Positions 13,417-64,000 of a stretch of 64,000 nucleotides of DNA are shown piece after piece. Position numbers and translations under genes: made by a program. How positions within the stretch are numbered: position 1 is the stretch's first letter; each line of letters begins with the position of its first letter. Location: NCBI GenBank assembly GCA_002269645.1, contig NIVC01001471.1, positions 124,001-188,000 of the forward strand. Reading direction: 5' to 3'. Below the pieces are notes generated by a model. That model was not told the origin of the DNA. It was given only the letters and a program-made list of their open reading frames with translations, and did no database searches. Source of the DNA: Macrostomum lignano (lineage: Eukaryota).

Positions 13417-15202
<1,786 letters not shown>

Positions 15203-15524: not shown

Positions 15525-16522
<998 letters not shown>

Positions 16523-20366: not shown

Positions 20367-20745
20367 CCCGAACCCCAAGGGAGAATCGCCCCGAACCCCA
20401 TTGGAGAATCGCCCCGAACCCCATTGGAGAATCGCCCCGAACCCCATTGGAGAATCGCCCCGAACCCCATTGGAGAATCGCCCCGAACCCCATTGGAGAA
20501 TCGCCCCGAACCCCATTGGAGAATCGCTCCGAACCCCATTGGAGAATCGCCCCGAACCCCATTGGAGAATCGCCCCGAACCCCATTGGAGAATCGCTCCG
20601 AACCCCACTGGAGAATCGCCCCGAACCCCATTGGAGAATCGCCCCGAACCCCATTGGAGAATCGCCCCGAACCCCATTGGAGAATCGCCCCGAACCCCAT
20701 TGGAGAATCGCCCCGAACCCCATTGGAGAATCGCCCCGAACCCCA
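20367..20745. repeat. 23-bp minisatellite (CGAACCCCATTGGAGAATCGCCC), ~16 copies, just past the stop of the taperin-like gene
   Basis: Near-perfect tandem units. Confidence 0.95.
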
Positions 20746-20783
20746 GCGGATAATCGCCCATTTGTGCATTGAGGTGCGGAGAA

Positions 20784-41480: not shown

Positions 41481-42115
41481 ACTCTGTTGTTTTTGTTGTT
41501 TGTGCAGCAAAGGTGTTAAAAAACGAAACTGACAGTGCCTTGCTCGACACCACAAGCAGGGATGAGTTCACTACACCACGCCCTAAATATTGCTTTCACA
41601 CAGCAGAATGCATTTAATGCATCATAGAGTTCAATCATATTTTATATGCTTCCCCACATCATGAATCCAAAAGTAGATTTATTGTCCGATGTACATTGCA
41701 GATTTCAATGAGACAATATTTGCAGATTGGATTGGAACTGCTAAGATACAAAAAAGTCTTTTAACGCTCAGATCAGTCTGACTGATCTGACTGACTGGTT
41801 GAGATAAATATAGGTTCTTTACCGGCCTTTAGTTATCACAAATTTGACTCGGACAGAGAAGCGTTGTACTAGGGCGGGCCTGGCTGCTGAAGCTGGGTGG
41901 TGAAGAAGCTCATTGCGCCAATGCATTTTCAGCATTTTCGGCCCCAGCTGATCGGGGCCGCGTCAGTGATGCGAAAACCATCGCGAATGCCCACGCTCAA
42001 AAACTCTGAGTCCGAGTCGAAGAACAATACTGGTGTCCAAGCAGCAGTTGACAGTGGCCAACGGCTTCAAAGCGCAGCCACCGAGTCGGCGGCGTGTTCT
42101 GCAGAAGGGCCGTCG

Positions 42116-42360
42116 GCAGGGCGAGCGGCAGGGCGAGCGTCAGGGCGAGCGGCAGGGCGAGCGGCAGGGCGAGCGGCAGGGCGAGCGGCAGGGCGAGCGG
42201 CAGGGCGAGCGGCAGGGCGAGCGGCAGGGCGAGCGGCAGGGCGAGCGGCAGGGCGAGCGGCAGGGCGAGCGGCAGGGCGAGCGGCAGGGCGAGCGGCAGG
42301 GCGAGCGGCAGGGCGAGCGGCAGGGCGAGCGGCAGGGCGAGCGGCAGGGCGAGCGGCAGG
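42116..42360. repeat. 12-bp GC-rich minisatellite (GGCAGGGCGAGC), ~20 copies, next to the mariner TIR
   Basis: Read directly. Confidence 0.95.
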
Positions 42361-42369
42361 ACGACTGTA

Positions 42370-43362
42370 CGGGGTGCTTATTAAGTTCCCGGAAAAGTTC
42401 AGTTCTGGTGGTCGAATCTGCGCGAAATTTTACCTGCAGAAACCGCAGTCTATTAAAACTTCTCAACATAATTTCTATTCAAATCAGAGCACTTTTGCAG
42501 GCGCTGGAACCATGCGTCAAAGCATCCTTTGAGATCAGCTTTGGTGCAGCTGTCCAGCTCAGCTAGCAGCGCAGCAACCAGCTCCTCCCTTGAGTCTTAG
42601 CGCTTCCCCTTCAGATTTTTCTCCATCCTGGGAAAGAGGAAGAAGTCAGCTGGCGCCAGGTCCGGGGAATATTCCGAAATCATCTAAAGAAACTCCTGGG
42701 TCACTCGTTCCCGGTGCGCGGAAGCGTTGTCCTGATGGAGGAAGATGCCTTTTGTCAAGCGTCTTCGGCCGCTGTTGTGCGAGCGCCTGCAGAACCTGAG
42801 GCAAGCAGACGGGCCGTATCATTCTTCCGTCACTGTGGCGCCTTGCTGCAGAAGCACTGGCAGCAGGATGCCACTGCGTCGGAAAAAATGACCGCCATCA
42901 GTGTGCCGACGCTGCGCTCGCGATGAAATTGGAGAGGAGCATCTTCCTCGTTTGTGACCCACTGCCGATTTTGCTCTTGGATCTCTAGGTTGAAGAAGTT
43001 GAAGCAGACCCAGGTTTCGTCGCCAGAGAGGTTGTTATCCTTTGAGCGGCCTCCGTCAAACCTGGGTGCCATGAGGTCGCAAACTCAACGCGGGCTCCCA
43101 TCTGGTCAGCGCTTAGCAGGTGGGACACCCAGCGAGCGGACAGCTTCCTCATGCCGAGGTGCTAGTGCAGGATCTCAATGATGGTGAAATCTGACACCCT
43201 GACGAGCTGCTCCAACTAGCGAATCGTCACTCGCCGATCTTCGCTCACATAGCGTCGAACAGCAGCAATGACTCACGCAGCGTCTGAAGGCAGGCGGCCA
43301 CAGAGCTGCCCAGCCGAAACTGTACCAGAATCGCCACTCGCCTATCGCGGTCAGTCGAAATC
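42370..43362 (-). mobile_element. Degenerate mariner element (DD34D type) retaining one TIR; 5' end lost at the foldback element
   Basis: Minus-strand translation shows MRKLSARWVSHLL (WVPHEL), GDETWV, FLHQDNASAH, YSPDLAPADFFLFP, ...RNYVEKF* with internal stops; terminus TA|CGGGGTGCTTATTAAGTTCCCGG at 42368-42392. Confidence 0.9.
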
Positions 43363-46300
43363 AGTAGAAATTTTTATAAGAAACCAGGCATTTTAGCAAA
43401 AATAAACCTTCAAACCACATAAAATTGAATAAAAAGCAGACATTTTCAATTATAAACCGCAAGTATTTTAATAGAAAAGTAAGCAAACAAGGCACAAAAC
43501 CAGCAAATTTTACCTTTTTCATTTTAATGTTACTGATAAGGTAGAGAGTAGAAACTTGTGAGCTGTATGGAGTTAGAAAGTATTAGCCAATATGTATCGT
43601 ATGAATTATTAGTTCAGTACCAGCCATTGGTCAAGCGAGCATTTATGAAGTTATTACGAGTGATGAAGGGATAGAGAGCTATATACAGGAAGACAGTATC
43701 CTTCTAAACCACCACGAACAGATTGCTAATAGAGATAAGCTTTGTCGGTAGGCAGTATGAGTAAGCGAAGGCGGGGTAAATACTTTTCCACATGCCAGAC
43801 AGAACAGTATTGTGCTAGGATTTCTCTCGAAATCGCGGTACGCTTAGTTTTTATCACACCATCCAGATGCGTCAACTGGTCAACAGTAGTCATTTATATG
43901 TTATTAGACCTTACAAACCCAGGTCAGGTAAATATTACAAAGAGTATATTGCGTACACACGCCAACTCCGAATACCAAGCCATACTAGTCTACTTGCAGT
44001 GCTCCTGGAGGGAAGGGACGGTCAAGAGTTACACACCAAGAATGCATTCACACAAAGAGTACACCACTCGAGCCCCGTCCATGCGCCCCGATATGTATGA
44101 CGCAGGCAACCCTCCCGACATGTATGCCGCAGGCGACCCTCCCGACATGTACCCAACATGTATGTCGCAGGCGACCCTACCGACATGTACCCCGACATGT
44201 ACACCCTACCATATGGCACTCGAGCCACAGGTGCCAAGCGGCCCCCCGAAATGTACGCCGCGGGCGCCCCCCTCCCGAGCCGAAGGTACACTCTTCCAAT
44301 ATGAGTGTACACTCTCCCAATACAAGTGTACACTCTCCCAATATGAGTGTACACTCTCCCGATATGAGTGTACATCGATTTGTAGTCAACAATACCTATT
44401 AACACAAAATTAGGCTAGTGAAAACTACTTATAGTAGGTGAAATTGCGTATATTTACGTAAAAAGTAAGCAAAACACATATTAATCACATCAGTAGGTGT
44501 AAATATCAGGGCATAATGCATATTACGAAACATATAGGTGTACGGACATATAGAATTAAGCATATGGGCAGCAAAAAACACACAATGTAGGTGCATTTTA
44601 TCGATATTTTGGCAGAAAAGTAGGTGAAATAGACAAAATAGTAGGTATAATACACAGAACCTACTCATTAGTGTAGTAGGCGCTTGTAGATGCTAGTATT
44701 TTATCAAACCCTCAAACGGTTGATAATGCATGACTAAATTTAGATACCGTCTATGGTAATTCGTCAGAAACTTTGGTCTTAAATGTTCTAAGTTACAGCG
44801 AAGACTTCTCAGTTTTTCATTTTAAGCCGTCTTCGCTTGCCTGCCTTAAACATGACCGCTACGCATCTTATCAATTGGTCTCATCTGCCGGTTGATAGTC
44901 TCGATGGCGTTTCATCCAGCGAATACTCATTCATTGCGGAGCTGAGCAGTGACAATCACCGAGATGACAATCAGCTGGAGGACTTTATTAACTTCATTAC
45001 CGATCATTCACGATCTGACGATGAACTGCTTGGTGTCGATCTGCCGGAATGTGAAGAGGATGGAGCTTCTGTTGCTACTGATGTCATGGACAAGGCCGAG
45101 GTGGATTCTCTACCAAGATCGACCAAGGAGCAAATGTTCCTTTATGGCAAAGCGTTTGCCAGCTACATGAGTGACTTGGGTCATCCTGTTGAAAGTCTCA
45201 AAACAATGGAGCCCAGTAGCCTCAACGAGCACCTGCGGTTCTACTACTTTCGGCTTTCTAAACCGAATGGAGAGTCGTACTCGCCATCTAGCTTGGTCTG
45301 CATTCGGGCCGGCATCCAGCGATTTTTTCACTTCATTATCAAGCGTGAACTCAACTATCTTCACGGATTGTCATTTCTCTGGCTTTTACGTAACTTACGT
45401 ACTTTTTACGTAAATATACGCAATTTCACCTACTATAAGTAGTTTTCACTAGCCTAATTTTGTGTTAATAGGTATTGTTGACTACAAATCGATGTACACT
45501 CATATCGGGAGAGTGTACACTCATATTGGGAGAGTGTACACTTGTATTGGGAGAGTGTACACTCATATTGGAAGAGTGTACCTTCGGCTCGGGAGAGGGG
45601 CGCCCGCGGCGTACATTTCGGGGGGCCGCTTGGCACCTGTGGCTCGAGTGCCATATGGTAGGGTGTACATGTCGGGGTACATGTCGGTAGGGTCGCCTGC
45701 GACATACATGTTGGGTACATGTCGGGAGGGTCGCCTGCGGCATACATGTCGGGAGGGTTGCCTGCGTCATACATATCGGGGCGCATGGACGGGGCTCGAG
45801 TGGTGTACTCTTTGTGTGAATGCATTCTTGGTGTGTAACTCTTGACCGTCCCTTCCCTCCAGGAGCACTGCAAGTAGACTAGTATGGCTTGGTATTCGGA
45901 GTTGGCGTGTGTACGCAATATACTCTTTGTAATATTTACCTGACCTGGGTTTGTAAGGTCTAATAACATATAAATGACTACTGTTGACCAGTTGACGCAT
46001 CTGGATGGTGTGATAAAAACTAAACGTACCGCGATTTCGAGAGAAATCCTAGCACAATACTGTTCTGTCTGGCATGTGGAAAAGTATTTACCCCGCCTTC
46101 GCTTACTCATACTGCCTACCGACAAAGCTTATCTCTATTAGCAATCTGTTCGTGGTGGTTTAGAAGGATACTGTCTTCCTGTATATAGCTCTCTATCCCT
46201 TCATCACTCGTAATAACTTATAAATGCTCGCTTGACCAATGGCTGGTACTGAACTAATAATTCATACGATACATATTGGCTAATACTTTCTAACTCCATA

Positions 46301-46503
46301 CAGCTCACAAGTTTCTACTCTCTACCTTATCAGTAACATTAAAATGAAAAAGGTAAAATTTGCTGGTTTTGTGCCTTGTTTGCTTACTTTTCTATTAAAA
46401 TACTTGCGGTTTATAATTGAAAATGTCTGCTTTTTATTCAATTTTATGTGGTTTGAAGGTTTATTTTTGCTAAAATGCCTGGTTTCTTATAAAAATTTCT
46501 ACT
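43363..46503. mobile_element. 3.1-kb foldback structure: inverted arms 43363-44467 and 45400-46503 around a 932-bp spacer
   Basis: Arms start AGTAGAAATTTTT and end AAAAATTTCTACT; I found only ~3 differences (2 substitutions, 1 indel); each arm has internal 27-bp and 21-bp tandem arrays. Confidence 0.95.
44837..45442 (+). pseudogene. N-terminal/core-binding part of a Crypton-type tyrosine recombinase (ZMYM2-4/QRICH1/KCTD1/KIAA1958-like), truncated before the catalytic domain
   Basis: SLPRSTK...KAFASY...LKTMEPSSLNEHLRFYYFRLSKPNGESYSPSSLVCIRAGIQRFF matches the Crypton pattern N.T...F..W...L...L..FY...R...G..YS..SL..IR..L.R; the ORF runs into the right arm and stops. Confidence 0.75.
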
Positions 46504-49955: not shown

Positions 49956-51623
49956 TCACAGCGGTGTCTCGTAGCACCCTGTGCTGGTTGACCTTTTCAT
50001 TCGTGTCTCTGTCTCTCCGTGCCGCCGTCTTCGTCGAGATCGATGCTGCTGCTGCTGCTGCTGCTGATTCTGCTGGTACAGCCTCTGCTGCTGCTGTTCT
50101 TCAGGCTCACTTTCTGGTTTCCCTGTTGAATTCGAGTCCAGTTCATCTACGGAGCTGTGCCTCACCTTCAGAATGGACTTCAGAGCCCCGCCTCCAACGC
50201 TGCCAGCTGGCTTCTGTCGATAAATCGCGATGGTAGGATAGTACACGCAGTACAAAGTGTACTTTACCTGCGGACAACGGTAGCCCGAGGACATGGGATT
50301 TGACCGCTTTGAATTAAATGAGGCCAAGAAGCTGCCCCTAGAGTTGCGTCGCTGTTGTTGCTGCTGCTGCTGCTGCAGCGGTTGAACCTGCGACTGTTGG
50401 CTGTTGGGAATGGCGCAGTTAATTGCTTCAACGAATGATGCCTCAGGACAGGGCATCGGGATACCCGGTTGCAGCTTTGGCACAGTGCCAATGAGGATCG
50501 GACAGCCTAGTGTCACGTCTTTCACAGGTACATGGGAAAAACCGAGAGTGACGCACATCTGAATTGCGTACTCCACTGCAATTGGGTGTTGGAAGTGGCT
50601 ATTCGGCAGAGATGTCGCTACCACGCCCGGAATGTGTAGCTTGTGCTTCGCCGACCAGAAGCGCTCCGGTTCCTTTCCAGGACCAAGAGAAGCCACCTGC
50701 TCCTGCAGCACAACCTGGTTGCGGCTGCCAAGTCGACGCTGGTTGCTCCCGAGAGCGGTGGCTCGCTGCACCAACTTTAGGACGATTCGCTGCACTGGTA
50801 ACGTACTGGAGGAGCAGTGCACGCTCAGATGGCAGTTGACGTCTTCACCTGGCACGTATGCGTCCTTCTTTAGCATCATTGAGGTTTTCACCTCGTCTTT
50901 CAGCAACTTATTGATAAGGCGATCAACACTGGTGCACGAGGTCTCGTCAAAGGTGCAACGCTGGGCCACAGCCGGCGCATTGAGATCAACATCCTCGATC
51001 AAGGTGAAAAACTGCGTTGCTTCAATTCCATCGGCCTCGTCCAAGGAGAAGGTGACAACGGCGCGGCAGCAGTAGCGCACGCAGCCGAACTCCTGACACT
51101 CGACTGAGTGCGGCAGCCAGCGGGGAAGCTGAAACTCGAAGCTGCGTTTCTCAACCAATCGGCTGCCTGGCAGAAGGTTTTCCTCGATGGACAGGTGACG
51201 CCGGCAGACCAGTCTCTGTTTCGAAACGCCGTTACTGGTCTCGGGAGGCAACTCGGAATAGCCGACGCACTCGATCTTGTAACCTGTCGCATAGACCGGT
51301 CCGCGCGTCTCGACGGTCACCCAGCCGGCGATGCGGTCTCCGCTGCGGAAGACCCGACGGCCGCCGCTGAAGCAGACGTCAAAGAGAAGCAGGCGACTCT
51401 TGGCCGATGCTGTGGCCAGCGCCGACAGGCTGGGCGCCTGTGCTGGCGTTGTCGACGGGGAAAGCGCCGGCGATGAGGTTCCCGACGAGCTGGCAACAGA
51501 GTCGTTGGCGTGCAAGATGACGAGCGACGGCGTCTCTTTGGTCATGCTCATGAGCCCGGGCGCCCCTTCTAGGCGTCTCTGTGAGTTTAACAAGGGGTTT
51601 TCAGCTAAAGATAAAGCTGACAT
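49956..51623 (-). CDS. Alpha-arrestin (arrestin domain-containing protein), single coding exon, 555 aa
   Basis: Arrestin-N (VFRSGDRIAGWVTV; FEFQLP..LPHS.E...GCVRY) and arrestin-C (KDAYVPGE; LHIP; I.VEY; CPILIGTVP) motifs, then a Gln/Arg-rich tail; an acceptor AG directly precedes the ATG. Confidence 0.85.
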   Translation of the reverse strand: MSALSLAENPLLNSQRRLEGAPGLMSMTKETPSLVILHANDSVASSSGTSSPALSPSTTPAQAPSLSALATASAKSRLLLFDVCFSGGRRVFRSGDRIAGWVTVETRGPVYATGYKIECVGYSELPPETSNGVSKQRLVCRRHLSIEENLLPGSRLVEKRSFEFQLPRWLPHSVECQEFGCVRYCCRAVVTFSLDEADGIEATQFFTLIEDVDLNAPAVAQRCTFDETSCTSVDRLINKLLKDEVKTSMMLKKDAYVPGEDVNCHLSVHCSSSTLPVQRIVLKLVQRATALGSNQRRLGSRNQVVLQEQVASLGPGKEPERFWSAKHKLHIPGVVATSLPNSHFQHPIAVEYAIQMCVTLGFSHVPVKDVTLGCPILIGTVPKLQPGIPMPCPEASFVEAINCAIPNSQQSQVQPLQQQQQQQQRRNSRGSFLASFNSKRSNPMSSGYRCPQVKYTLYCVYYPTIAIYRQKPAGSVGGGALKSILKVRHSSVDELDSNSTGKPESEPEEQQQQRLYQQNQQQQQQQHRSRRRRRHGETETRMKRSTSTGCYETPL

Positions 51624-52380: not shown

Positions 52381-54431
52381 TGTACTGTGCTGTACAGTAC
52401 AGACAGAGCGGGAGAGGGGGCAGAAAATGAATGAAAAGCTAACAACACTGGGAGAGAGAAAATATCGGGCGTTTCACCTTTGGGCATTGAGTCCGGAGCA
52501 GGGCAGGGAGGAGCAGCTTGGCGAGAATGTGAGCTCTGCACAGCGCGTTGCCAAACCGCGAGCAAGCAATCATTTTCTTTGCTCTTGCCGCTCAACGAAC
52601 CTAAATGATTTTATTGGCCAACGGGAATATAATGGCGCAGATTGTATATTGTATAACTACACACTCGTATATAATTTTATCTTTTGGCTTCTCACAATCT
52701 ATATTTTTATGCTGCAGTATTGTGCAAAGTCATTTCCCACACACTTGTCTCGCCTTCTTGGCTTTGGCAGAAGGTTAACTAGATTATTTCCAAAAATACG
52801 CGTAATTTGTACAAACTATTCTTGCTCAACAAAGCGCGCGCGTTTCATACATTCACATGTACATATACCATTGCGAGGGGGGCCAGTAGACAAATATAGA
52901 CGCTTTCTGAGTCGAGTCTATATGCTCTATCAACCACAGTGTGGCGCTGTATCACACCGTATACGAATATCACATATGTATGTAATTTATATAACGTATA
53001 TGTATATAACGTATATATATGTGAAAAATTCGAAAGGCCGTTGGCCATCGCATATATAACATATGTGATGGAATAGAAAGATCCAGGGGGAAAGAATAAT
53101 TACAAGTATATTTCTATGAAATTAAAAGTCAGATATGCCTCCAGCTCTCCATTTCTGCAAGCCTAACACGGACCAGCCAAGATGCATTTACATGTATAGC
53201 AAAACATGCAGTGGTGAACTTGAAAATTCAGTGATGGAACCGCGAGATTTCCTAAAATTATATTAGACAAGTCGTTGCGTTGCTGTGCTTAACTTTTTTC
53301 ATAACGCTATATAATTGTCTCTGCAAAAAAATAAAATTTCACATCATTATTGACCAATATAAATGCTGTGGCGCGCAGGCCCTCAAAAGTCAAAATGCTA
53401 TACAGAATGAACGATTTACATGTAATGAAGCACAACTAGCTAGCTAAATGTATGGGATATGGATAGAATTATCAAGGATGAATTTAGAAATGTCTACTCT
53501 ATTAGTCTACTTAAAATTAACTAAGGGATCCATCCAATTGGCATATTCAATAAGGCATAAAAGTAATTTACAGATGTAAAATTGTATACTAACGGCTTGA
53601 TGTATATAGTTTACAAAAAATCACTTTTTCTCGCAAAAAACAAATAAAACAAAACCTTTACTATTAAATTTCCTTTAACTGCTGGAAAAAATACAATTAA
53701 AAATAAAAAAATTGATACAAAAACTTTCAAAGCATACTACAAAGCATAACATGCGTCTCAACTTTTTTAAAATTCAATTGATTCTTATGTTATGATGATA
53801 ACTCATTTGAGATTGAAGTCGCGCGCCGCTCGATGGTACCTACCCTGCTCGCTTGCTTGATTGTAATTAGAAGTGGCTGTTCTTTTTGTTAGCCTTTTGT
53901 ACTGTTCAAGCGCACCTTTCCTGTTATCCTTAAGCTTTTATTCTACGAAATATGATTGAGCTGTACCTTGACATTTAGAATTAGAATATTTTTGACTTAA
54001 GTAAAAAGAGATCAATAATCGGCCGCATAACCTCTCTTTGCCGTTGGCTAACACCTAAGATTTAAATATCTAGTTAGTGCAACTACAGTTGAGTTTTCGA
54101 GTTGCTTTTTAGCTAGGCCTAAAGCAATTGACTCATTGAGCCTAAACTATCGATTTTTCACAAAAACTTACAAGATTTAATCTATTAAACCTATGGCTTC
54201 TCGTGGTGCTAAAAGATCAGCTCAAGGAAATTTATTGCAGCAGATTGACGATTTTCTAAAATCTGCAGATGGATTGCTTGGTGCAGAATCAAGCGAAACT
54301 GAAAGCTTTTCTATTTCGACTAGTGCAATGAATAGACCTAGTCAGCCTAGACAAGACAGACCTTTTCGAAATGTTCCTATTCCAAAAGAAACTTCAGGCA
54401 GCAAAACAGGAAGAGTAGCTACATCTTCGAG

Positions 54432-57400
54432 CCATAGTGCAGAAGGACGGGTGTACGACGGAAATTTCCGTCGTACATTGAGGTTGGTTGTCGTACATGT
54501 CGTACATCGTTCATTTTTGCAAGGGCTCTTTGTCGTACATGTCGTACCGTCGTTGGCCACACTGTCACTGTCGTACATCTCTGACTAGAAAGCTATATGC
54601 ATAGGCATTTAAAAATACAATTTCGTTTTCATAATTAAATTAAATTTATTCAAAGTTCTTTTTACGAGGCACAAATAAAATATAATCTTGGCATACTTAA
54701 TAATAATTTTTTATTATGTGGCACCAAATTTCACATTTTTATATTCAAGGCCACACAAATGTGCATCCGTTGTTTTAATCTTAACCTTGTTTATTTCTTT
54801 TTTGAAATGCGTATCGTTGTATCGTGTTACTGGGAATTGAATTGTGAATGTGAATTAATTCATAATCATCTGATCTTGTAATTCTCGTCCTCCGGTCAGT
54901 CTCGTCTCTCGTGATCGTGATGTGATCTAAGATAAGATCTGATCTGACTAATGTCTTTTGTCTTATCCCTTATAACTTTTACTTTTCTATAATCTATGGC
55001 TATGCACTCTGCACTGCACTAGCACTATATACTATACTACAAGCTACAACTAAAAGTAACTTTTAAGTTTTCTTAATTTGTTGCAAAACTTAAACTAGCA
55101 ATTTGTAATTTTTCAACTTTGACAAGTAAATTTATTAGTAGTTAGTACGAGTAACAAGTTGAGTAATTAATTAAGTTGAGACTGTTGAGTTGAGTTGCAT
55201 GTTGCATTGTTGCAGTTGACTCATTGACTTTGACTGTTGACAAATGACAAGGTCAACTGTCAAGTGACACTTGTGACAGTTTGTTGTTTGAGACTTTGAG
55301 TTAGTGAAAGTGACTAGTGACTGACTGACTGGTCTGTCTGACTGACTGACTCGTGTCTCGTGTCTGTGTCTGTCTGGACATCTGGTGATTCTTTCAAGTT
55401 TATTTTTTAAACATTTTATCACTTTTACCTTCATAAATTAGTTCTAGAACTTCTAGTGTTCTGTTCTAATTCTAGTTCTTAACTTAACTTCTTGTTCTTA
55501 ATCTTAGTTGCAAGTTTTTATTTTAAAAGTTCAAGTTGTCAGTTGTGTAATTTCACAATTTCAGTAATTGAGTTGACATTAGACAAGTTTATAAAATTAT
55601 CTTATCACTTTCTTTTAATAATTAGTAATTAATTAATTAAATGCATTTTTTATTTGTCAAATTTGACTTTACTTGACAAGTTGAAGTTGACAGTTGAGTA
55701 CTTGAGTATTGAGTAAAGACATAGTAATTAAGTTGACAGCTATGGCTTATTGCTTGGCTTGAAACCAACAAATATTTCTTACGAAATAACAAGTAGAAGT
55801 AGCTAATAGCCATCTAGCCAAGAGACACCAAGTTTTGCTTCGTTTCATGAAAGAAAAGAAGTGAATATATATAAATTAGGGCCTACTGCAAGTCTGCAAC
55901 TAATTTGAGACAAAACTTCAGGTGCTTGGCAGCAACTTTAGCAAATACAACTTCCAAGTTGACTTGACATTGACAAGTGTATAAATTTATCTTATTACCT
56001 TTACTTTTAGTCTTTTAGTAATTCTAAATTCATAGCAAATTTTGCTATTGTATTGTATTGTAAGTTGACTAGATTGAGTAATTGAGTTGTATAAAATTAT
56101 GCAATTGATTATATTTGGTAGAGTTGAGTAGAACATTTGGTAGAGCTAGATTGTAGAATGGTACAGTATAGTATATGAAATTATTTTATAAAAAAAACAA
56201 AATATATTGAAATGTGCATTAATTATATCCTATTACTAAATGTCTAATCTTTATTTCCTAAATTTCTATAAGTATAATTATAATTATTTATTTAATTTTT
56301 GTAAACAAAACCATATTTTTATTCAACTGATAACTAGTTTGGTTTATGCTTACTTATTGATTAGATTTGGTCATAACTAATAATACTAAATTAAATGCTG
56401 ATTGCCAAAAAAATTAACTTGTCTTTCAGCTAAATTCAGCTATTCAGCATTTGCTTTTTGATTTATTGTGCCAAAATTAATCTCTATAATGTCTCGTAGC
56501 AGTAGCACATCAAGTTCTGGCTCTGAAGAAAATCAGTCTGAGACAGAGACACCACTAGCTGCAGCTTTGCAAGCTAGTATCCAGGACCAGGCTGACCAGG
56601 CAGAGCCAGAGGCAGTAGTAGAGAAGGCGAAGGCTGCTGAGTGTGCTTGGGCCCATATGCCAATCATGCAACAGGCACAGCGGCAACGCCAACAGCAACA
56701 GGCTAATGTGCAAGTACAAGCAAAATCAAAGCGTCCACTGAGTTTGTCTCATGCAGCGTCTTCATCTGCACAAACTGAAGAGCCACCAACTAAGAAGCCT
56801 CGCGGAACTGTGTGTGACCCACATTACTGTGTGGATTGCCTTCAGCGAGGGCTTCCACTGTCCAACTGCCGCATTTATCGAAACAATGGTAGTAGCAGAA
56901 AAACTCATCGGAGTCGCTGGCACAAAGAAGACCCAGCCAATAAGATTTTAACATATTGCAGACCTGACCATGCTGATGTTCGCGACCTAATTGCTGCCAG
57001 GCCTGCCAATGAGAATGAGAAGCAGGTAAAAAAACGCATCACAAAGGCCATGGTCAGCCATGAGGTGCTGGAGGTTGAAAGTGCCAGTGATGAAGAGTCA
57101 CCTGAACGTCCTGAAGTTCCAATGACCACTGAGCCTGAGGCAGAGCAGCAGCAGTCTGAGGGACCAAAGACAAATCTGGTAGTAAACATTGAAGTACTGG
57201 AATCATCCGCCGTTGACCAAAGATCCAGCTCATTTGTTAGGCAGCTTGCTGATGCTTCACCTATCCTTCCCAGTCCTGCTGAGGCTGCATCTACAGCATC
57301 ATCAAGCACGTCAGGTCGGGATCTTTTGGCAATTGTCACTGGGCTGGAAATTAAAATGGCGGAGGCAGCCCGACAACTTGCCCTACTTCCGATTATACTA

Positions 57401-60400
57401 AATGTTGTTCGGGACTTGGCGCTGTCACAGGCTACCTCCAGCTCAAACTCTCGGGGACAAAACTTACCAAAAGTGCCGCCAATTGTGGCTAGCAACATGG
57501 CCGAGCTCCTGGAGAACGAGATGCTCGCCACAGCACCTTGCGGTGAGGACACAATTTTATACTGTGTCCCGTGCTACAACGTTTTAATGGAAGGCACGGC
57601 CTTCTCGCCAAAGTTGACTGTTGCGGAGAGGCACAGCACTTTGTAAGTCCATTGTATGTACTTTTATCTAACAGGCAATAAGACAATCCAGTTGGCCTTT
57701 TCCATTTATTTATTATAAACTTTCATTTCTCTAACTTCTTATAGAAACCCCAAGTCGATGGGCACGCTTGCACGAGGGCAGCTCATTACAAAGCTGGAAA
57801 TGACTGAGATCCTTGCGTGTGGCGAGGCATTCTCCCGGCTTCGTTATAGGATAGTGAAACATCTCTCTGGTATCGAGGCTGTCGGCCATGTGAAAGCTAT
57901 GAAGAAGTATGCGGACCGCAAGATTGAAGAGAAGCGCGTCTCAGGAACTGTTCGGCGCCTTTTGCGTTGCTCTGTTGCCAATATCGAATCAGCGTCAGCT
58001 AGTAAGCACTATGAGACGTTCGTGAGCATGCTTTATCGGTCGGACGCTGAAGTTGGCCAGCGGGGCCACGGCCGGTATGTACCATATTATGTGGTTTGTA
58101 TCTGTATGCCATTAGCTAAGCTATGGTTATTTTGTACGCTATTTGTTAATTTACCACCCACTATGCATCCAACTAGGGAGTTTAACAAGGAGTTGTGGTC
58201 GTTGTTTGAGGTCACCGCTGACAAGTATACGGCTGAGTTCCTGCAGACCCCACTGCCGTCCACCGGATGTCCTCCCTGCTACGCCATTGCTTGCGACAAA
58301 AGCACACCAGGTCGCATCACTAACCAAGCTGTTATGGTGTTGGCCAGGTAAGTAGGGAGGAAGAAGGAAAAGTAATGTACATTAGGAGTATCCGCCACTT
58401 AAATATTACTTTTACTACCTCCTTAAAACGGATAACCCCTAACAGGTGCGAGACTGGTGACGCCGTTGCTATCCCAGGTGGCGCCCCGGCCGTTTATTCC
58501 AAAGAGATGGACGGCAGCGGCCCCGTTCTGGTGCAGCGGCTTTTTCAAGGTCTGGCGAACTTTGATTTGCCCATTGATCGTCTTGTGGGCGTCATTGCCG
58601 ACGGGCAATATCAAACTGCGCCTTTTAAAACGGCAATATTTGAGAAGCTGAAGGAGGCCGGAGCCGACTATGAGATCCCAATTAACTGGGACCCGGCCCA
58701 CTTTATAAACCTGGCCGTGACTAACGTGCGCGATAGTGACGACGGAGAGGCGTTGCAGGATTTTATTGACAGGGCAAACCTGTTTCCGCATCTTTTTGGC
58801 CACGGGCGTGGCCGTTCGGCTTTGGAAGTAAGTATGCAACCTGAATGTCTAACTGAATAGTTTACCGAGGGTTTTAGATATACGTTTGCTATAAAACTAC
58901 TCCAAATTCTTTGTTTGTAAAAAAACAGATTGCTTCCGAGGACCATGCCGGAGCAATTTCATCATTTGCCTCGCAGCGCTTTACCAGTTCAGCCATGAAC
59001 CAATGGCAGACCATCTTTCGCTGCTACGGCGATCTGCATGCCGCATTTCGAGCCGAGAAACCACGAGTCAGAGATAACGACCCACAGCCGTACATAATGT
59101 TCGGATTTGATTTTGTGTGCGACTTGTTGGGCTACCTGGATCTCTTTGCGCCAATCAAGTAAGTTGATTTATATGCCTTGTGGGTAGTAAAATTACTATG
59201 GGATCAACTTTTTGATTACCTACTTACTCCAAACACATAACACTTGCACAGAGCTCTTATGGAGATTGCGCAGAATCTTCAGCTGCCCCACTGGAAAGTG
59301 TCTACCTTATGGCCATTGGTAGCTGAGTTCCTCCATGTCCATGCAGAGCAGTTTCGTAGTGAGGACTACCCCACGCTGCATGAGCACATCGACAATCTGC
59401 ACGTTGGTGGCACATTTGATGGCGTGACTCTGCTGGACGGCTGGCTCAAAGTAAAAAAGCCGGTTGCTGGCTCTGCCTCTGACCAGGATCAGTGGCGCGC
59501 TCGAGACATGGAGGTAAGCTTGTGCAATCATTATATTATGTACTCTGCCAAAGTTACCATATTCTCCTTTGTGCTTCATTATTCAGCTCCATCCTTCTTC
59601 CTCCTTCCTCAGGACATTGCACGTGATACACAGAAGCTTGCCGGGGCACTTCACCGCAGCTTCGTTGCTCGCATTCAACGCTGCTGCGACCCGAGCACCT
59701 CTGATTGTGCCTCCTTCGATGCAGCTGCCATCATCCGTGCCATTGCATGCAGGGACCCTGAAGTTGCAGCAGAAGAGTTTGCAGACCAGTGCGCTCCCGC
59801 CTTTAAGCGGCTTGTGACCGAGGCAGTCAAGCATAAGCACCTGGCTCATCTGAAAGTTCCCATGGCCCGAAGGTGAGCTCCTTCACAATCAAAACTATAA
59901 ATGCACTGGTACTATAACTAGTGTGAGGCTGGAAATCACATATTTCAAGACCACTTTGCTACAGAAAAATGTAACGAAATCGAATTGTATTTAATTTTAT
60001 TTTTTGTCCACTAAACTTAGGTATGCTGCGAACTTTGTGGACACTATACGCCACGTCATTTTCACGGGTGAAGGCCGCAGTAGCTGGCTGGTGCCTTCCA
60101 TCAACGGGCCACTGACGGATTTAAAAGTAGCAGCACCCACTTTGGCACGTCAGTTATTGCTGCATCTATCGGGTTCGACAGCAGGTGGTGAATTTTCATC
60201 TGTTGTGGTGGACGAAGCAGCAGTTTATGCGTCTTTCTATGCCGACCCAGACGTTTTCCAGCGAGCCGGCCCTGCAACATGTGCACTACTTGATTTTGCA
60301 CTACACCGAGGTGGCACTGGTGAGTTGCAAATTCCAGTTGCTATCTACAAATTAACTAATGTCACCTTGGGCAAGTCAGTCAGATTTGATCAGAATTTCA

Positions 60401-61000
60401 TCTACATATTTTTCCGCCTTTTTCTTCCAGAAGCGATTGTCGAGAGCTTCTACTCGACTATGCGGTCGCAACAGCAACAGGGAGGCCAAACCAACGACAC
60501 CCTTCAGCTTCGCGCTAAGTTAGCTTGGTTGCTACCACCCATGGGCGGCGATGCATGCGAAGAATTTCTCGACGACTCTGCGAAACTTTTTTTTAAAGGC
60601 GACAAAAGCCGTGGGATTCGTCCACATTGGAGTCCGTTTTTTGCTGCCAAAACTAAGGACGCCATCGGCAAGGTGCTGCAGAGGCGCGCAGCAGCTGTTT
60701 CCCGTGTGCCATTCATCGGCCGTCGGAAGCAGAAGCCCAAAGACGGCGACAATAATGCCAATTGATAAATTCATTTAATTGAATCATTCATAATTAATAT
60801 TACTTCAATTACTTGTAAACTTGTTATTACCACTTACAACTTATTATTACTCTTTGTCTGGGTCGGGAGTATGTGGGTTTCTGCATTGTAGTTTGTCGTA
60901 CAAAAAAAAATTACTTAGTTCACTTGTGTCGTACTGTCGTACAGCAGGCTAAAACTGAAATTTGCCTTCCGTCGTACACAGAAATCCTTCTGCACCATGG
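54432..61000 (+). mobile_element. Full-length hAT-superfamily DNA transposon, 6,569 bp
   Basis: Perfect 8-bp TSD TCTTCGAG (54424-54431, 61001-61008); TIRs CCATAGTGCAGAAGGA..GTGTACGACGGAA / TTCCGTCGTACAC..TCCTTCTGCACCATGG; subterminal GTCGTAC motifs (6 plus 1 inverted on the left, 4 on the right); internal transposase gene. Confidence 0.95.
56489..60765 (+). CDS. hAT transposase, ~1,140 aa, nine exons: 56489-57642, 57745-58074, 58177-58347, 58446-58827, 58929-59158, 59252-59513, 59613-59872, 60021-60319, 60431-60765
   Basis: Eight GT-AG introns (102,102,98,101,93,99,148,111 nt) give a 3,423-nt stop-free CDS. Motifs: CxxC..H...H finger (CVDC..HRSRWH), second finger (YCVPC..KH..H), catalytic D (ACDKST), D (IADGQY), WDPAH (CxxH-equivalent), SQRF (RW-equivalent), E in GTEAIVESFYSTM. 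Confidence 0.88.
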
Positions 61001-61728
61001 TCTTCGAGGCCTGATAGGCCTATGGAAAGATTGTTATCAGCTTACCAAAGACAAAGTAATACTCCAACTTTTTCTACTTCTGAAGATTCTGATTCTGAAG
61101 AAATTAAGCAAAGAGGTCCATATGCAGGTGGGTTTTTAAAATCATTTTTGAGTTTTGTCTTTTTTATTACGCCTATTGAATTGAATCTAATATTGTCAAT
61201 GTTATTTTTTTAAATAGTTAGTTATTTTATTTAATGCACTAGCCACTGGTTTATATATTAATTTGTAGCATTGCCATTGTTAAATTTAGAATCACATAAT
61301 AACTAAATTTTTATACAAGTTTTAATGACTTGTTTTGGTATTAAATTATTATTTCTGATCAATAAATGCCAGGGTGTACTTTATATATCAAATGCACAAA
61401 ATATTTACAGATTTTGTTTGCTAGAAAAGTATATATATTGTTGGATTTAAATGTAATGTAGCAATGATAACAATAGCATTAATATTATTTTATTAAAGCT
61501 CTCTTGAGACCAAAAAATCTTTATTGAAGTTTTATGTATACATATTATATTTTTTTAATTTCTATACAGAATGTGTAATTTTTTGGGATGAATTTCAACC
61601 TGGCATAAAGGATCAATTTTATATTTGGTAAAATTTTAATTTATAGTCTATCTATAGGCTACCTAAAAAATAAAAACTCTATGTATATATATGTGTCTAT
61701 GGACAATTTTGTTTACTATAGACTCCCA

Positions 61729-64000
61729 GGGTCTTAGTCATTTCGTCAACTGGCCATTTTGTCAACTCAGTTTTTGCATTGGTTGTTTTGTCAACTAGCC
61801 AATGAAGCGGTCTCAAACCTTAGTCACTTTATCAACTGACCAATGGAGAGTTCCCCAACATTGGTCACTTTGTCAACTGCCAATAAACTACCCCCCGTGG
61901 CCGCAAAACAACTAAAACTGAACCCTAAAATGACTAAGTCAATAGGCTAATTAATATATAGATACCCTTCTATACAACATCTGCTGGCTTCAATCGATGC
62001 ATCTCTGACTATACATTAACAAACAATAATTCACTCAGGTGTTTGAAATGTGTGTAGTATAACGCAGTTGATACCCCATGTTACACATTTGCATGACAAT
62101 TTTTAGATGTACATGTAGAAATTCATTACAGAGTAGTTGATGAGTACTAGACCAAAAATAATAATGCTTGAAATGGTCCACTCTACATGGTACATTATAA
62201 ATATATATATATAAAAAGCATTTCAAATTAACCATTACATTTATGGTCATATCGATGTCAATCACGCTCACGCATTAAAATTTATATAATAATATTTTTT
62301 ATGCACACACTATATTTAAAACCTATATTAAGTATTAAGCACAATCGTACTGCTATTGTAGTGCGATTTCTGTATGGTAAGTGGTAATACGGTACTAAAT
62401 GCAGACAAAAGAAAAATATATTATTTTAAGAAAATTGCAATATTAGGACATCTTGGAAACTGTACATTACGTTACAATAGCATATGGTTCATGTACAAAG
62501 TGCAGACAGAAAAAAATATAAAAAATAATATAATATATAGTGAATGTTACATATATAATCAGGTAAAAACAAGTTGTAAAACAGTCCAATTAATGAATTA
62601 TAAAGTCTTATACTTAGCTGCACTTTTATTGTTGCTGCTGCTGCTATTGTGCCCTGCTGTGTGCAAAATGCGGAATGTGGCCAAGTCTTGTGCAGCTGAG
62701 CAGGAATGCACGAATCGAAAGCGCGCGGCTACAGTACTGCGCCCAATATCACTCTACTTGCACTTGCAGCCGCTCGTACCACGCCCGATGCTGCCACTCT
62801 TGTACTCCTTGTTGCACCAGCGTGGCGTGCACAGGTACCAGCAGTACCTCTGTATGGAGCAGTTGAATGAGAGGGTACAGGGTGAGTTTGACTCTCTTAG
62901 CCCACTGCTTCAGTCGCCAATGCCAGCCTTTCACCTTGTTGTTTGTCCAAATAGACTGGCCATAAACGCTTATTTCAGCAGCGCTGGTCAGCCATGTACT
63001 GTTGACATACTCAGCCAGGTCCAGTAAAAGCGGCGCTTGCACTCCAGTGACAACTTGTGCTAGGCCGTCGTTCATGTGCTGGTATGGCAGGTAGGGCAGG
63101 TCCATCAGCATCCTGGTGAAATTCTTCGTACCTGGTCTTTCAGGTAGGCCTGTTGCAATCCTATATACTGAATGCGACAAAATATTGCCTGTGCATAGTG
63201 AAAAAGGCAGCCTTGAAGCCTGACCATAGGGAAGACAGCTCGCAAGGCCTGCCATACAGCAGCCTCAAAGTCCATTATGCAGACTTCAGGTGTTGTGTTG
63301 CTGATTGCCTCCCGTAGCGATTGAAATACAGCAGTATAGTTGTTGACAGCCTTGCCTGACATTATAGCAAATGCTAGGGGCACCTGTTTGACTGTTGTTC
63401 CTTGCTGGATGTAGCAGTGCATAGAGTAGAGTTGCTTGAATGGTGCATGGATGACATCAAAAGTGCCATCTAGAAACCATAGCTGACGGGATGCCAGCAG
63501 CTCAATTTGATTTGTAGTAAAAAGCAGCAAATGGTGTTTGCCAGTTCCTTCAACTTGGATGTCAGCCCGAACAAAATCTGGAGAGATACGGTCCATAGCC
63601 AGATCAAACTGGAGGTCAGATGGGGGCATTGGATGCTCAGCTTCCCAAGCTCTGTTTGCAATCCGCACCAGTTGACAAATAGCTGGTACTTCCTGGCCAA
63701 AGTCAGTCACGCTATGGTCTAGCAGCTTCAACTCCACGATTGCAGCAGCTGATCAAAAGCACTGCTGCTTTGCTTCATCCTTGACCAGAACGACAATGCA
63801 ATGCTTTACCAACTCACAAATTCGTGGCTCGCAGATATGGGCAGCCTGGCCACTCCAAATGCCTTGATTGTCCTAGATGGCTGATGCTGGGCACTTAAAC
63901 CTTGAATTTTGCTGGGTGCAACGCCAATAGCGTCTGTTACTTTTTCGACGTTGAGGCCCAAAACGTATTCTTGGTCACCCAGTCATTGAATGAGTAAGGG
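61729..64000 (-). mobile_element. Degenerate MULE (Mutator-like) element with FLYWCH + MULE transposase; continues beyond the window
   Basis: Minus strand: RRYWRCTQQ..KCPA (FLYWCH), WFLDGTF, MDFEAA, GCLFHYAQA, TNNKVKGWH (catalytic E changed to K), broken by stops/frameshifts; probable terminus GGGTCTTAGTC at 61729 followed by five TTTGTCAACT-like subterminal repeats. Confidence 0.85.

What the first reader, a model, noticed from the sequence alone, without database searches (positions are those of the whole stretch)
54432..61000. Intact, intron-rich hAT transposon hidden from the ORF track
The ORF track shows only scattered fragments at 56-61 kb. Using canonical GT-AG sites they splice into one stop-free 3,423-nt CDS (~1,140 aa) with two N-terminal Zn fingers and a full D-D-E triad (ACDKST / IADGQY / IVES), but WDPAH in place of the usual hAT CxxH. 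The gene sits within matched TIRs and a perfect 8-bp TSD (TCTTCGAG), with GTCGTAC subterminal sites at both ends. Seen: TSD, TIRs, splice sites, open frame. Established: 8-bp TSD and these motifs define hAT. Inferred: recent insertion and possible autonomy. Eight introns and this size are unusual for a hAT transposase, so it may be an undescribed lineage and a candidate native transgenesis tool.
Basis: partly seen in the sequence, partly recalled or inferred. Interest (0 to 1): 0.85.

Follow-up and report, generated by a model that had tools for sequence, protein, structure and literature searches.

The report
Active hAT-like transposon in a flatworm
This is an intact 6.6-kb cut-and-paste DNA transposon of the flatworm Macrostomum lignano, found as at least five identical copies at different sites, so it has moved very recently; its enzyme has the fold of hAT transposases but belongs to a widespread animal lineage that no standard protein-family model recognises.

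Summary
These are the 8-bp target-site duplication (TSD) TCTTCGAG, the 15/16 terminal inverted repeats (TIRs), the GTCGTAC subterminal repeats, and eight GT-AG introns giving a stop-free 3,423-nt CDS of 1,140 aa.

The spliced protein is letter-for-letter identical to four GenBank proteins of Macrostomum lignano. Those proteins come from an RNA-seq-guided annotation, so the junctions have transcript support.

The four GenBank loci carry the same 6,569-bp element at 100.000% identity. Their flanks are unrelated, and each has its own perfect 8-bp TSD. With the window copy, that makes at least five independent and very recent insertions.

Classification:
- **Fold level.** A confident AlphaFold model (pLDDT 88) matches only hAT transposases: Hermes in the PDB and a Pandoravirus hAT protein in BFVD.
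- **Sequence level.** No Pfam hAT model (hATC, DUF4371) or PDB profile matches the protein, 35 relatives or the family consensus.
- **Differences from hAT.** The motif is WDxxHxLNL, not CxxH. Termini start 5'-CCA. Elements are 6.0-6.6 kb.

The family has at least 584 clusters (50% identity), from flatworm, amphipod, tunicate and jellyfish. Relatives elsewhere lack introns.

Verdict: a real, apparently active, hAT-like element of a deep and unnamed lineage. I could not check it against Repbase or Dfam.

The parts
54424..54431 (.). Left copy of the 8-bp target-site duplication, TCTTCGAG
54432..54447 (+). Left terminal inverted repeat, CCATAGTGCAGAAGGA
   Evidence: pair I23, 15/16. The A/G difference at position 5 is present in all five copies, so it is native to the element.
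54452..54585 (+). Left subterminal repeat region: seven GTCGTAC/GTACGAC sites, including the perfect 26-nt palindrome TGTACGACGGAAATTTCCGTCGTACA at 54452-54477
   Evidence: (I12, D1). I infer these are transposase zinc-finger binding sites, by analogy with Hermes subterminal repeats (PMC10368747).
54586..56488 (+). About 1.9 kb of AT-rich, low-complexity non-coding leader (many short GTTGAC/TGAC-type micro-repeats); presumed promoter and 5' UTR
   Evidence: No ORF with homologues lies here. Its function is inferred.
56489..57642 (+). Exon 1 (aa 1-385): disordered N-terminus, KKPR nuclear-localisation-like motif, zinc finger 1 (C114, C117, H138, H143; nt 56828-56917) and the CxxC of zinc site 2 (C359, C362; nt 57563-57574)
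57745..58074 (+). Exon 2 (aa 385-495); carries the conserved H424 and H433 (nt 57860-57889)
58177..58347 (+). Exon 3 (aa 495-552); first catalytic Asp, D535 (nt 58295-58297), on beta-strand 1 of the RNase H fold
58446..58827 (+). Exon 4 (aa 552-679); second catalytic Asp, D604 (nt 58600-58602), and the WDPAH = D(2)H motif (nt 58690-58701 for DPAH)
58929..59158 (+). Exon 5 (aa 680-756); start of the insertion domain, with the conserved R696-F697-x-x-S700 motif
59252..59513 (+). Exon 6 (aa 756-843); insertion domain
59613..59872 (+). Exon 7 (aa 844-930); insertion domain
60021..60319 (+). Exon 8 (aa 930-1030); end of the insertion domain
60431..60765 (+). Exon 9 (aa 1030-1140 plus stop); GTEAIVESFYS motif with the catalytic Glu, E1034 (nt 60442-60444)
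60895..60978 (+). Right subterminal repeat region: four GTCGTAC sites on the + strand; the outermost is the half-site TGTACGACGGAA read inward from the end
60985..61000 (-). Right terminal inverted repeat (reverse complement CCATGGTGCAGAAGGA)
61001..61008 (.). Right copy of the 8-bp target-site duplication, TCTTCGAG

Best explanation
Window 54432-61000 is a full-length, probably autonomous cut-and-paste DNA transposon of Macrostomum lignano. It has transposed so recently that its copies have not yet diverged.

It encodes one 1,140-aa transposase from nine exons. The protein is built like a hAT transposase:
- an N-terminal C2H2/BED-type zinc finger behind a KKPR nuclear-localisation-like motif;
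- a second conserved Cys2-His2 site in a helical domain;
- an RNase H-like catalytic core (D535, D604, E1034), interrupted after beta-strand 5 by a roughly 400-aa, mostly helical insertion domain that begins at the WDPAH motif.

Proposed mechanism, inferred from Hermes and other hAT elements and not shown here: zinc-finger domains of a transposase multimer bind the GTCGTAC subterminal repeats, including the palindromic pair near the left tip, and bring the 16-bp TIRs together. The DDE site nicks the DNA and releases the element through hairpins formed on the flanking DNA. The exposed 3'-OH ends then attack a target 8 bp apart, and repair of the gaps creates the 8-bp TSD.

In classification terms, the element belongs to a deep hAT-like lineage found across animals. 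The lineage has 5'-CCA...TGG-3' termini, 8-bp TSDs, D(2)H in place of C(2)H, and elements of 6.0-6.6 kb. Current hAT sequence models do not recognise it.
For: Shown directly:
- Structure of the element.
- The spliced 1,140-aa protein equals PAA45963.1, PAA49331.1, PAA83209.1 and PAA93563.1 exactly. That annotation derives from StringTie/TACO RNA-seq transcript assemblies with TransDecoder ORFs (PMC5730564).
- Four loci in GCA_002269645.1 carry the 6,569-bp element with 0 mismatches and 0 gaps. Their TSDs are AAGAGAGC, CAGCCCAT, ATTAGGCC and GCACAGGT, against TCTTCGAG in the window. None of the ten 3-kb flanks resembles another.
- Family: 584 clusters at E<=1e-3.
- DDE and D(2)H residues are conserved in 21/24 to 30/30 sequences. 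WDxxHxLNL-type motifs occur in 57 members and none has Cys at that position.
- Intronless relatives align straight across all 8 junctions.
- Three other lineages have one TIR+TSD solution each. All have 8-bp TSDs, 5'-CCA termini and a length of 6.0-6.4 kb. All have lineage-specific subterminal repeats.

Fold:
- The AlphaFold2 model has pLDDT 88.4 and pTM 0.81. D535 sits on beta-1, D604 just after beta-4, D634 just after beta-5, and E1034 on the helix that follows the insertion.
- In the PDB, the nine significant Foldseek hits are all Hermes (E 9e-6 to 7e-5, probability 1.00, TM up to 0.57 over 534-706 columns). The next hit has E 0.012.
- In BFVD, the single significant hit is a Pandoravirus japonicus 'HAT family C-terminal dimerization region' protein (E 1.3e-9, TM 0.55, 666 columns).
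Against: - No sequence method links the family to hAT. Pfam gives nothing for the protein, for 35 relatives or for the family consensus. A family profile finds nothing in PDB sequences. hhalign against Hermes and a small Hermes profile gives probability of 1% or less.
- The termini (CCATAG, CCAGG) do not fit the YARNG pattern I recall for hAT.
- The eight TSDs fit neither of the two hAT target consensus patterns I recall (nTnnnnAn, nnnTAnnn).
- The elements exceed the 2.5-5 kb range quoted for hAT (PMC3942097).
- The N-terminal finger model was poor (pLDDT 64) and found no BED match.
- Activity is inferred from identical copies. No excision event, empty site or enzymatic assay has been seen.
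- Repbase and Dfam could not be searched.
Confidence: 0.8

Rival explanations
1. It is an ordinary member of one of the recognised hAT families (Ac, Buster or Tip) that has simply diverged.
For: 8-bp TSD, short TIRs, subterminal repeats and a Hermes-like fold. One relative (P0002) is named 'DUF4371 domain-containing protein' by UniProt.
Against: BuT2 and its relatives in the Tip group carry a detectable hATC domain, described as highly conserved across hAT (PMC3942097). None of 36 members here, nor the consensus, hits hATC, DUF4371 or any other Pfam model, even at E<=10. This includes P0002 itself. D(2)H replaces C(2)H in all 57 members examined. Termini and target sites differ.
Confidence: 0.07
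2. It belongs to, or founds, a separate superfamily with 8-bp TSDs (for example the poorly characterised Novosib, or an unnamed one), and its likeness to hAT reflects only very distant common ancestry.
For: There is no sequence-level link to hAT. The termini, D(2)H motif, larger size and extra beta-hairpins in the insertion domain are all distinctive. Novosib has no Pfam model and its RNase H domain is uncertain (PMC5751038).
Against: In two structure libraries the only significant full-length matches are hAT transposases. The collinear string D...D...[D]xxHxLNL...R[F]xxS...ExxYS mirrors hAT motifs, partly by my recollection. No Novosib sequence was available to test.
Confidence: 0.2
3. It is a P-element-superfamily transposon (8-bp TSD, D(2)H motif).
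For: The 8-bp TSD. D(2)H lies about 30 aa after the second Asp, as in P-element transposase, where D303 is followed by D339 (PMC8230255).
Against: There are no THAP or Tnp_P_element Pfam hits. No P-element transposase structure appears among the 50 best Foldseek hits, while Hermes takes ranks 1-9. The insertion domain is about 430 aa, against about 190-230 aa in P.
Confidence: 0.02
4. The identical copies arose by segmental duplication, polyploidy or assembly redundancy, not by transposition. Alternatively, the gene is a domesticated host gene.
For: The Mlig_3_7 assembly is known to be highly redundant (PMC5730564).
Against: Identity stops exactly at the TIR tips in all five loci. Each locus has a different perfect 8-bp TSD. 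The ten 3-kb flanks share no similarity. Neighbouring genes differ. A domesticated gene would not keep TIRs, TSDs and subterminal repeats.
Confidence: 0.01
5. The copies are recent but the encoded protein is not active. The element would then be moved in trans by another family member, or would now be silenced.
For: No functional assay exists. M. lignano holds several related lineages (P0002/P0003, P0005, P0006).
Against: The ORF is intact in all five copies. All conserved catalytic and zinc-binding residues are present. The gene is transcribed and correctly spliced. Each related lineage has its own subterminal repeat motif, which argues against cross-mobilisation.
Confidence: 0.1

Closest known systems
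Hermes (hAT superfamily, Musca domestica; PDB 2BW3, 4D1Q, 6DWW, 8EDG, 8SJD)
   Same: - Best structural match.
- RNase H core split by a large helical insertion domain that starts at the [C/D]xxH motif.
- N-terminal zinc finger.
- 8-bp TSD and short TIRs.
- Short subterminal repeats arranged differently at the two ends, with a palindromic pair near the left tip (PMC10368747).
   Different: - 9-11% identity, with no HMM or hhalign signal.
- WDPAH in place of CSSH, and RF in place of RW.
- Insertion domain about 100 aa longer, with beta-hairpins.
- 1,140 aa against 612 aa, and a 6.6-kb element.
- Termini CCATAG, not the CAGAG I recall for Hermes.
- Eight introns.
Pandoravirus japonicus hAT-family protein A0A811BLV7 (carries the hATC domain by name)
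   Same: It is the only significant BFVD match: E 1.3e-9, TM 0.44/0.55 over 666 columns.
   Different: 12% identity. The window protein has no detectable hATC domain.
Ac, Buster and Tip families of hAT (for example Ac, TcBuster, BuT2/Tip100)
   Same: 8-bp TSD and 10-25-bp TIRs. Some have multi-exon transposase genes (BuT2 has five exons; PMC3942097).
   Different: They have detectable hATC, with or without DUF4371. They have C(2)H. They are 2.5-5 kb long. They have family-specific target consensus patterns that the eight TSDs here do not show.
P element / THAP9
   Same: 8-bp TSD. D(2)H motif after beta-strand 5 (PMC8230255).
   Different: No THAP domain, no structural match to P-element transposase, and a different insertion domain.
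Novosib and Zisupton (KDZ) superfamilies
   Same: 8-bp TSDs (my recollection). Novosib also lacks any Pfam model (PMC5751038).
   Different: No hit to the KDZ Pfam model. Novosib proteins were not available for comparison.

Membership tests
hAT superfamily | 8-bp target-site duplication | tested here: met
   Five copies of this element and three related lineages all have perfect 8-bp TSDs.
hAT superfamily | Short TIRs (10-25 bp; PMC3942097) | tested here: met
   16 nt at 15/16 here. Relatives have perfect TIRs of 18 nt or more.
hAT superfamily | Terminal consensus 5'-YARNG (recalled, not from a tool) | tested here: not met
   Termini are CCATAG, CCATGG, CCAGGG and CCAGGA. The pattern fits only if the first C is skipped, and the TSD boundaries do not allow that.
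hAT superfamily | Element length 2.5-5 kb (PMC3942097) | tested here: not met
   6,569 bp here. Relatives are 6,018, 6,160 and 6,369 bp.
hAT superfamily | C-terminal hAT dimerisation domain (hATC, PF05699) detectable by sequence | tested here: not met
   No hit for the protein, for 35 relatives or for the consensus at E<=10. By eye, ESFYS resembles Hermes ERTFS, without statistical support.
hAT superfamily | DDE RNase H core interrupted by a large alpha-helical insertion domain; overall Hermes-like fold | tested here: met
   AlphaFold2 pLDDT 88.4. Foldseek's only significant hits are Hermes (E about 1e-5) and a Pandoravirus hAT protein (E 1.3e-9).
hAT superfamily | C(2)H motif after beta-strand 5 | tested here: not met
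   D(2)H (WDPAH) in 30/30 aligned sequences and 57 members; no Cys variant. The position right after beta-5 and the following HxLNL context are kept.
hAT superfamily | N-terminal BED-type zinc finger | tested here: inconclusive
   The C-x2-C-x12-20-H-x4-6-H pattern is conserved in all 5 sequences that reach it. The model was weak (pLDDT 64) and Foldseek found nothing. No zf-BED Pfam hit.
hAT superfamily | Subterminal short repeats needed in cis | tested here: met
   Repeats are present in all four lineages and absent from the interiors. Their requirement for transposition was not tested.
hAT superfamily | Excision through hairpins on flanking DNA | not testable with these tools
   This needs biochemistry or excision footprints.
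hAT superfamily | Sequence-level homology to reference hAT transposases | tested here: not met
   phmmer and a family profile against the PDB found none. hhalign against Hermes gave probability of 1% or less. The Hermes profile was narrow (7 sequences), so this test is weak.
P superfamily | THAP DNA-binding domain, Tnp_P_element domains and a GTP-binding insertion domain | tested here: not met
   No Pfam hits. No P-element transposase among the top 50 Foldseek hits.
Mutator/MULE | MULE or Transposase_mut domain; 9-10-bp TSD; long TIRs | tested here: not met
   No Pfam hit. The TSD is 8 bp and the TIRs are short. The IS256-type ISCth4 matches only weakly (E 0.012, TM 0.23-0.31).
Zisupton/KDZ | KDZ transposase domain (PF18758) | tested here: not met
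   No hit at E<=10.
Novosib | Similarity to Novosib-1_CR transposase (Repbase) | not testable with these tools
   No Novosib sequence or model is available here (PMC5751038).

The most novel reading that the evidence does not exclude
The element is a currently active founding example of a previously unrecognised, superfamily-level sister lineage of hAT. That lineage is spread across Metazoa and has D(2)H chemistry, 5'-CCA termini, elements of about 6-6.6 kb and no existing sequence model. In M. lignano it has also gained spliceosomal introns inside a transposase gene that is intronless in other hosts. Its ends plus its transposase would then give a native, host-adapted transgenesis and insertional-mutagenesis vector for a regenerating flatworm model.
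Probability: 0.3. Interest if true: 0.75.

Novelty: new variant of a known kind. Interest (0 to 1): 0.6.

Why it matters
**For M. lignano research.** This is the flatworm model in which stable transgenesis exists, but it relies on random integration or on a proof-of-principle piggyBac system (PMC5730564, PMC8717057). An endogenous transposon with at least five identical, transcribed, intact copies is a candidate native vector and mutagen. It is also a possible source of ongoing insertional variation between laboratory lines.

**For transposon biology.** The family shows that a large animal-wide group of DDE transposases (at least 584 clusters at 50% identity) escapes all hAT sequence models, although its fold is clearly Hermes-like. 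It also carries the D(2)H motif reported for P-element transposase. That makes it useful for rooting the relationships among the hAT, P, Kolobok and Mutator superfamilies.

**For intron evolution.** Intron-free relatives elsewhere, and only partly shared intron positions between the two M. lignano lineages, make this a tractable case of intron gain or loss inside a mobile element.

Tried and rejected
**Searches that failed or found nothing**
- The search for homologous proteins timed out on the full protein and on a 457-aa core. A 204-aa piece found only three fragments.
- Exact look-ups of single-exon ORFs, of the mis-spliced UniProt model P0151 and of the neighbouring arrestin ORF found nothing. 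The last was meant to locate a paralogous empty site.
- The host ORF restored by precise excision has no homologue. 'Inserted in a host exon' therefore stays unproven.

**Sequence links to hAT, all negative**
- Pfam on the protein, on ten relatives, on 36 family members and on the family consensus.
- PDB phmmer and family profile.
- hhalign against Hermes alone and against a seven-sequence Hermes profile. The profile was narrow because the Hermes search returned only six fragments. I wrote the Hermes sequence from memory and then verified it against PDB 8EDG, with 611/612 identical.

**Other tests that gave nothing**
- N-terminal finger: AlphaFold2 pLDDT 64 and no Foldseek match.
- The eight introns are no more alike than shuffled controls, so they are not 'introner'-type repeats.
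- There are no other copies or fragments of the element in the window.
- The Hyalella azteca locus (L005), the short Logan contig (L003) and the P0005 locus (L006) gave no TIR+TSD solution.

**Literature**
- Searches for hAT or DNA transposons in Macrostomum, for Novosib and for Repbase hAT subgroups found no description of this family.
- Yuan & Wessler 2011 (PMC3093488) is not held.

**Rejected readings**
- P element, MULE, KDZ/Zisupton, a domesticated gene, and segmental duplication. See the rival explanations.
Full report
**1. The observation**

- The 8-mer TCTTCGAG lies at 54424-54431 and again at 61001-61008.
- Between the two copies the element starts CCATAGTGCAGAAGGA and ends with the reverse complement of CCATGGTGCAGAAGGA, a 16-nt TIR with 15/16 match.
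- About 20 nt in from each tip both ends carry TGTACGACGGAA.
- GTCGTAC or its complement occurs 7 times within 54453-54576 and 4 times within 60895-60977. It does not occur in the 6-kb interior. The two ends hold 11 of the 14 copies in the 64-kb window.
- The ORF list shows only fragments here.

Joining the fragments at eight GT-AG introns (93-148 bp) gives nine exons: 56489-57642, 57745-58074, 58177-58347, 58446-58827, 58929-59158, 59252-59513, 59613-59872, 60021-60319 and 60431-60765. Together they make 3,423 nt and 1,140 codons with a single terminal stop. Exons are 52.8% GC and introns 34.5% GC.

I estimate about 0.02 false solutions per locus.

**2. Whose genome, and is the gene model right**

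A full HMMER scan of 1.84 billion cluster representatives found 584 relatives at E<=1e-3. The nearest are Macrostomum lignano proteins.

An exact look-up of my spliced 1,140-aa protein showed that this very sequence is deposited four times: PAA45963.1, PAA49331.1, PAA83209.1 and PAA93563.1, all 'hypothetical protein' of M. lignano. The GenBank annotation of that assembly (Mlig_3_7, GCA_002269645.1) was built from a genome-guided RNA-seq transcriptome using StringTie, TACO, TBONE and TransDecoder (PMC5730564). The eight junctions therefore rest on transcript models, and the element is transcribed.

Two further lines support the junctions:
- Relatives that are single uninterrupted ORFs (P0004 in L002, P0007 in L003) align without breaks across all eight junctions. 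One example is GT|EAIVESFYS against GTEAIVESFYR.
- Two older UniProt models (P0001, P0151) are mis-spliced versions of the same gene.

**3. Copies**

The four GenBank loci (L007-L010, on four different contigs) each hold the whole 6,569-bp element with 0 mismatches and 0 gaps relative to the window.

Identity ends exactly at the TIR tips. Each copy has its own perfect 8-bp TSD:

| Copy | TSD |
|---|---|
| L007 | AAGAGAGC |
| L008 | CAGCCCAT |
| L009 | ATTAGGCC |
| L010 | GCACAGGT |
| window | TCTTCGAG |

None of the ten 3-kb flanks resembles another, and the neighbouring genes differ. So at least five independent insertions have not yet acquired a single substitution in 6.6 kb. That is the signature of very recent, probably ongoing, transposition.

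It also shows that the one TIR mismatch (A/G at position 5) is a native asymmetry of the element.

None of the four loci is the window's site. I cannot tell whether the window comes from another assembly or from an unannotated part of the same one, so I make no claim about polymorphism.

**4. What the protein is**

*Sequence methods are silent.*
- Pfam finds nothing for the protein, for ten relatives, for all 36 members of alignment A1 or for the HMM consensus.
- The PDB sequence search, with one protein and with the family profile, finds nothing.

*Structure is not.* AlphaFold2 on residues 326-1140 with the 36-sequence alignment gave pLDDT 88.4 and pTM 0.81.
- Against the PDB, the nine significant Foldseek hits are all Hermes, the only hAT transposase with a solved structure that appears in these results. 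They have E 9e-6 to 7e-5, probability 1.00 and TM up to 0.57 over 534-706 columns. The next hit is the IS256-type ISCth4 at E 0.012. No P-element, RAG1, Transib or piggyBac structure is in the top 50.
- Against BFVD, the only significant hit is a Pandoravirus japonicus protein named for its hAT C-terminal dimerisation domain (E 1.3e-9, TM 0.55, 666 columns).

*Catalytic residues sit where an RNase H-fold transposase needs them.* In the model D535 lies on beta-1, D604 just after beta-4, D634-x-x-H637 directly after beta-5, and E1034 on the helix that follows an insertion of about 400 aa. All are conserved:

| Residue | Conserved in |
|---|---|
| D535 | 26/28 |
| D604 | 27/29 |
| D634 | 30/30 |
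| H637 | 27/30 |
| E1034 | 21/24 |

*Motif details.* Fifty-seven family members show WDxxHxLNL-type motifs and none has Cys at that position. By my recollection the trailing HxLNL is the context of the hAT CxxH block, and R696-F697-x-x-S700 parallels the hAT RWxS block. hhalign's best, though non-significant, alignment pairs exactly that stretch with Hermes TRWNST.

*N-terminus.* A C-x2-C-x20-H-x4-H finger (C114, C117, H138, H143) follows a KKPR motif. It is conserved in all five sequences that extend that far. A second invariant set (C359, C362, H424, H433) lies in the domain that precedes the catalytic core. A fold-level test of BED likeness failed for lack of a good model.

**5. The family as a transposon**

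The same blind scan gave one solution in each of three other lineages:

| Locus | Source | Identity to window protein | Terminus | TSD | Length |
|---|---|---|---|---|---|
| L001 | M. lignano | 35% | CCATAGTCAGGA | GACATCAA | 6,018 bp |
| L004 | M. lignano | 37% | CCAGGATGGAAT | TGGCCATC | 6,369 bp |
| L002 | unidentified ENA eukaryote | 30% | CCAGGGTGCATT | CATGTTTG | 6,160 bp |

- Each lineage has its own CG-containing 7-8-mer (GTCGTAC, GGCGCAC, CGGCGTG or TGCGCGC). It is repeated 4-12 times in the outer 250 bp, never in the interior, and lies on the same strand at both ends.
- The window's left end also has a perfect 26-nt palindrome of two such sites, while the right end has one half-site. 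Hermes likewise has a quasi-palindromic pair of subterminal repeats at its left end, bound by its BED domains, and its two ends are arranged differently (PMC10368747).
- Named hosts are M. lignano, the amphipod Hyalella azteca, the tunicate Styela clava and the jellyfish Sanderia malayensis.
- The L001 gene shares introns near aa 495, 552 and 1030 but not the others. L002 and L003 have none. The introns were therefore gained in the M. lignano lineage or lost elsewhere. They are not copies of one another.

**6. Mechanism**

*Shown:*
- the anatomy of the ends;
- the 8-bp staggered target joining, implied by eight perfect TSDs;
- an intact, expressed transposase with a Hermes-like fold and a complete, conserved active site;
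- recent multiplication.

*Inferred from Hermes and other hAT elements:* the zinc fingers bind the subterminal repeats. A multimer pairs the two ends. DDE chemistry excises the element through hairpins on the flanking DNA, with the D(2)H motif at the start of the insertion domain helping to shape the active site. The 3'-OH ends then integrate 8 bp apart.

**7. Comparison and membership**

The element works like a hAT transposon and has the hAT fold. By the usual criteria, however, it fails several tests:
- hATC is undetectable;
- the motif is D(2)H, not C(2)H;
- termini are CCA..., not the pattern I recall for hAT;
- the elements are longer than 5 kb;
- the eight TSDs match neither target consensus I recall for the Ac and Buster families.

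It passes on TSD length, TIR length, subterminal repeats and overall fold. P, MULE and KDZ membership are rejected. Novosib could not be tested. I therefore file it as a hAT-like element of a deep, unnamed lineage, and not as a member of hAT in the strict sense.

**8. Novelty and verdict**

Every named member in the protein databases is 'hypothetical' or 'uncharacterized', and I found no paper that describes the family. I could not query Repbase or Dfam, and a family this widespread may already sit there under some hAT subgroup.

I rate it a new variant of a known kind, with interest 0.6. Its inference of recent activity is strongly reinforced. Its 'hAT' label is right at the level of fold and mechanism but not shown at the level of sequence-defined membership.

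Noticed in passing
window 54193-54431 + 61009-61213: Removing the element and one TSD copy restores a 147-codon ORF (MASRGAKRSAQ...SSRPDRPMERLL...) in DNA of 31% GC, followed by a plausible GT donor. The insertion may therefore interrupt a coding exon. The ORF has no homologue among 5.8 billion proteins.
   Followed up: partly
window 62749-63737 (- strand): Decayed Mutator-like transposase. One ORF hits Pfam MULE at E 2e-13, and adjacent ORFs in other frames suggest frameshifts.
   Followed up: partly
window 43363-44472 and 45395-46503: A perfect inverted repeat of about 1.1 kb (100% over 825 + 284 nt) around a 922-bp core. An ORF at 44837-45442 starts in the core and runs 48 nt into the right arm; it has a weak QRICH1-domain hit (E 0.0024). 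This could be a mobile element with long inverted ends or an assembly palindrome.
   Followed up: partly
window 39133-41109 (+), 49956-51623 (-), 3713-5002 (+), 13417-15202 (+): A reverse-transcriptase ORF (RVT_1, 1.5e-27), an arrestin-domain ORF, a TPR-repeat ORF, and a G-protein alpha-subunit gene whose two halves are separated by a long microsatellite-filled intron.
   Followed up: partly
window 738-1235, 4983-5807, 6344-6895, 10555-11172, 15263-16599, 20287-20820, 29778-30818, 41897-42566: Many long minisatellite or microsatellite arrays that read as long repetitive ORFs. This fits the repeat-rich M. lignano genome.
   Followed up: no
window 54432-54681 and 60751-61000; L001 9421-15438; L002 5656-11815; L004 8464-14832: In all four lineages the subterminal 7-8-mers lie on the same strand at both ends, so they point in opposite directions relative to the two tips. 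All the motifs contain CG (GTCGTAC, GGCGCAC, CGGCGTG, TGCGCGC).
   Followed up: partly
L007, L008, L009 (element at 7944-14512 in each): In three of the four GenBank loci the insertion lies 735-924 bp beyond the 5' end of a divergently oriented annotated gene. This hints at a preference for regions upstream of genes, but three cases are too few to judge.
   Followed up: no
L006 10001-15985 (P0005, PAA52400.1; M. lignano): A related lineage annotated as a gene. It has lost the second Asp (EGYY) and the His of D(2)H, lacks the last exon, and has no TIR or TSD. It is either a decayed copy or a candidate domesticated transposase.
   Followed up: partly
L002 10623-10625: The intronless relative from an unidentified ENA eukaryote assembly has a single in-frame stop that splits an otherwise full-length transposase ORF, although its TIRs and TSD are perfect.
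   Followed up: no
P0002 (UniRef A0A1I8GFG7), P0001, P0151, P0188, P0189: UniProt names for these M. lignano gene models (DUF4371-, SWIM-, HECT- or SET-domain-containing) could not be reproduced with the current Pfam for P0002 (the only one scanned). The longer models probably fuse the element with neighbouring genes.
   Followed up: partly
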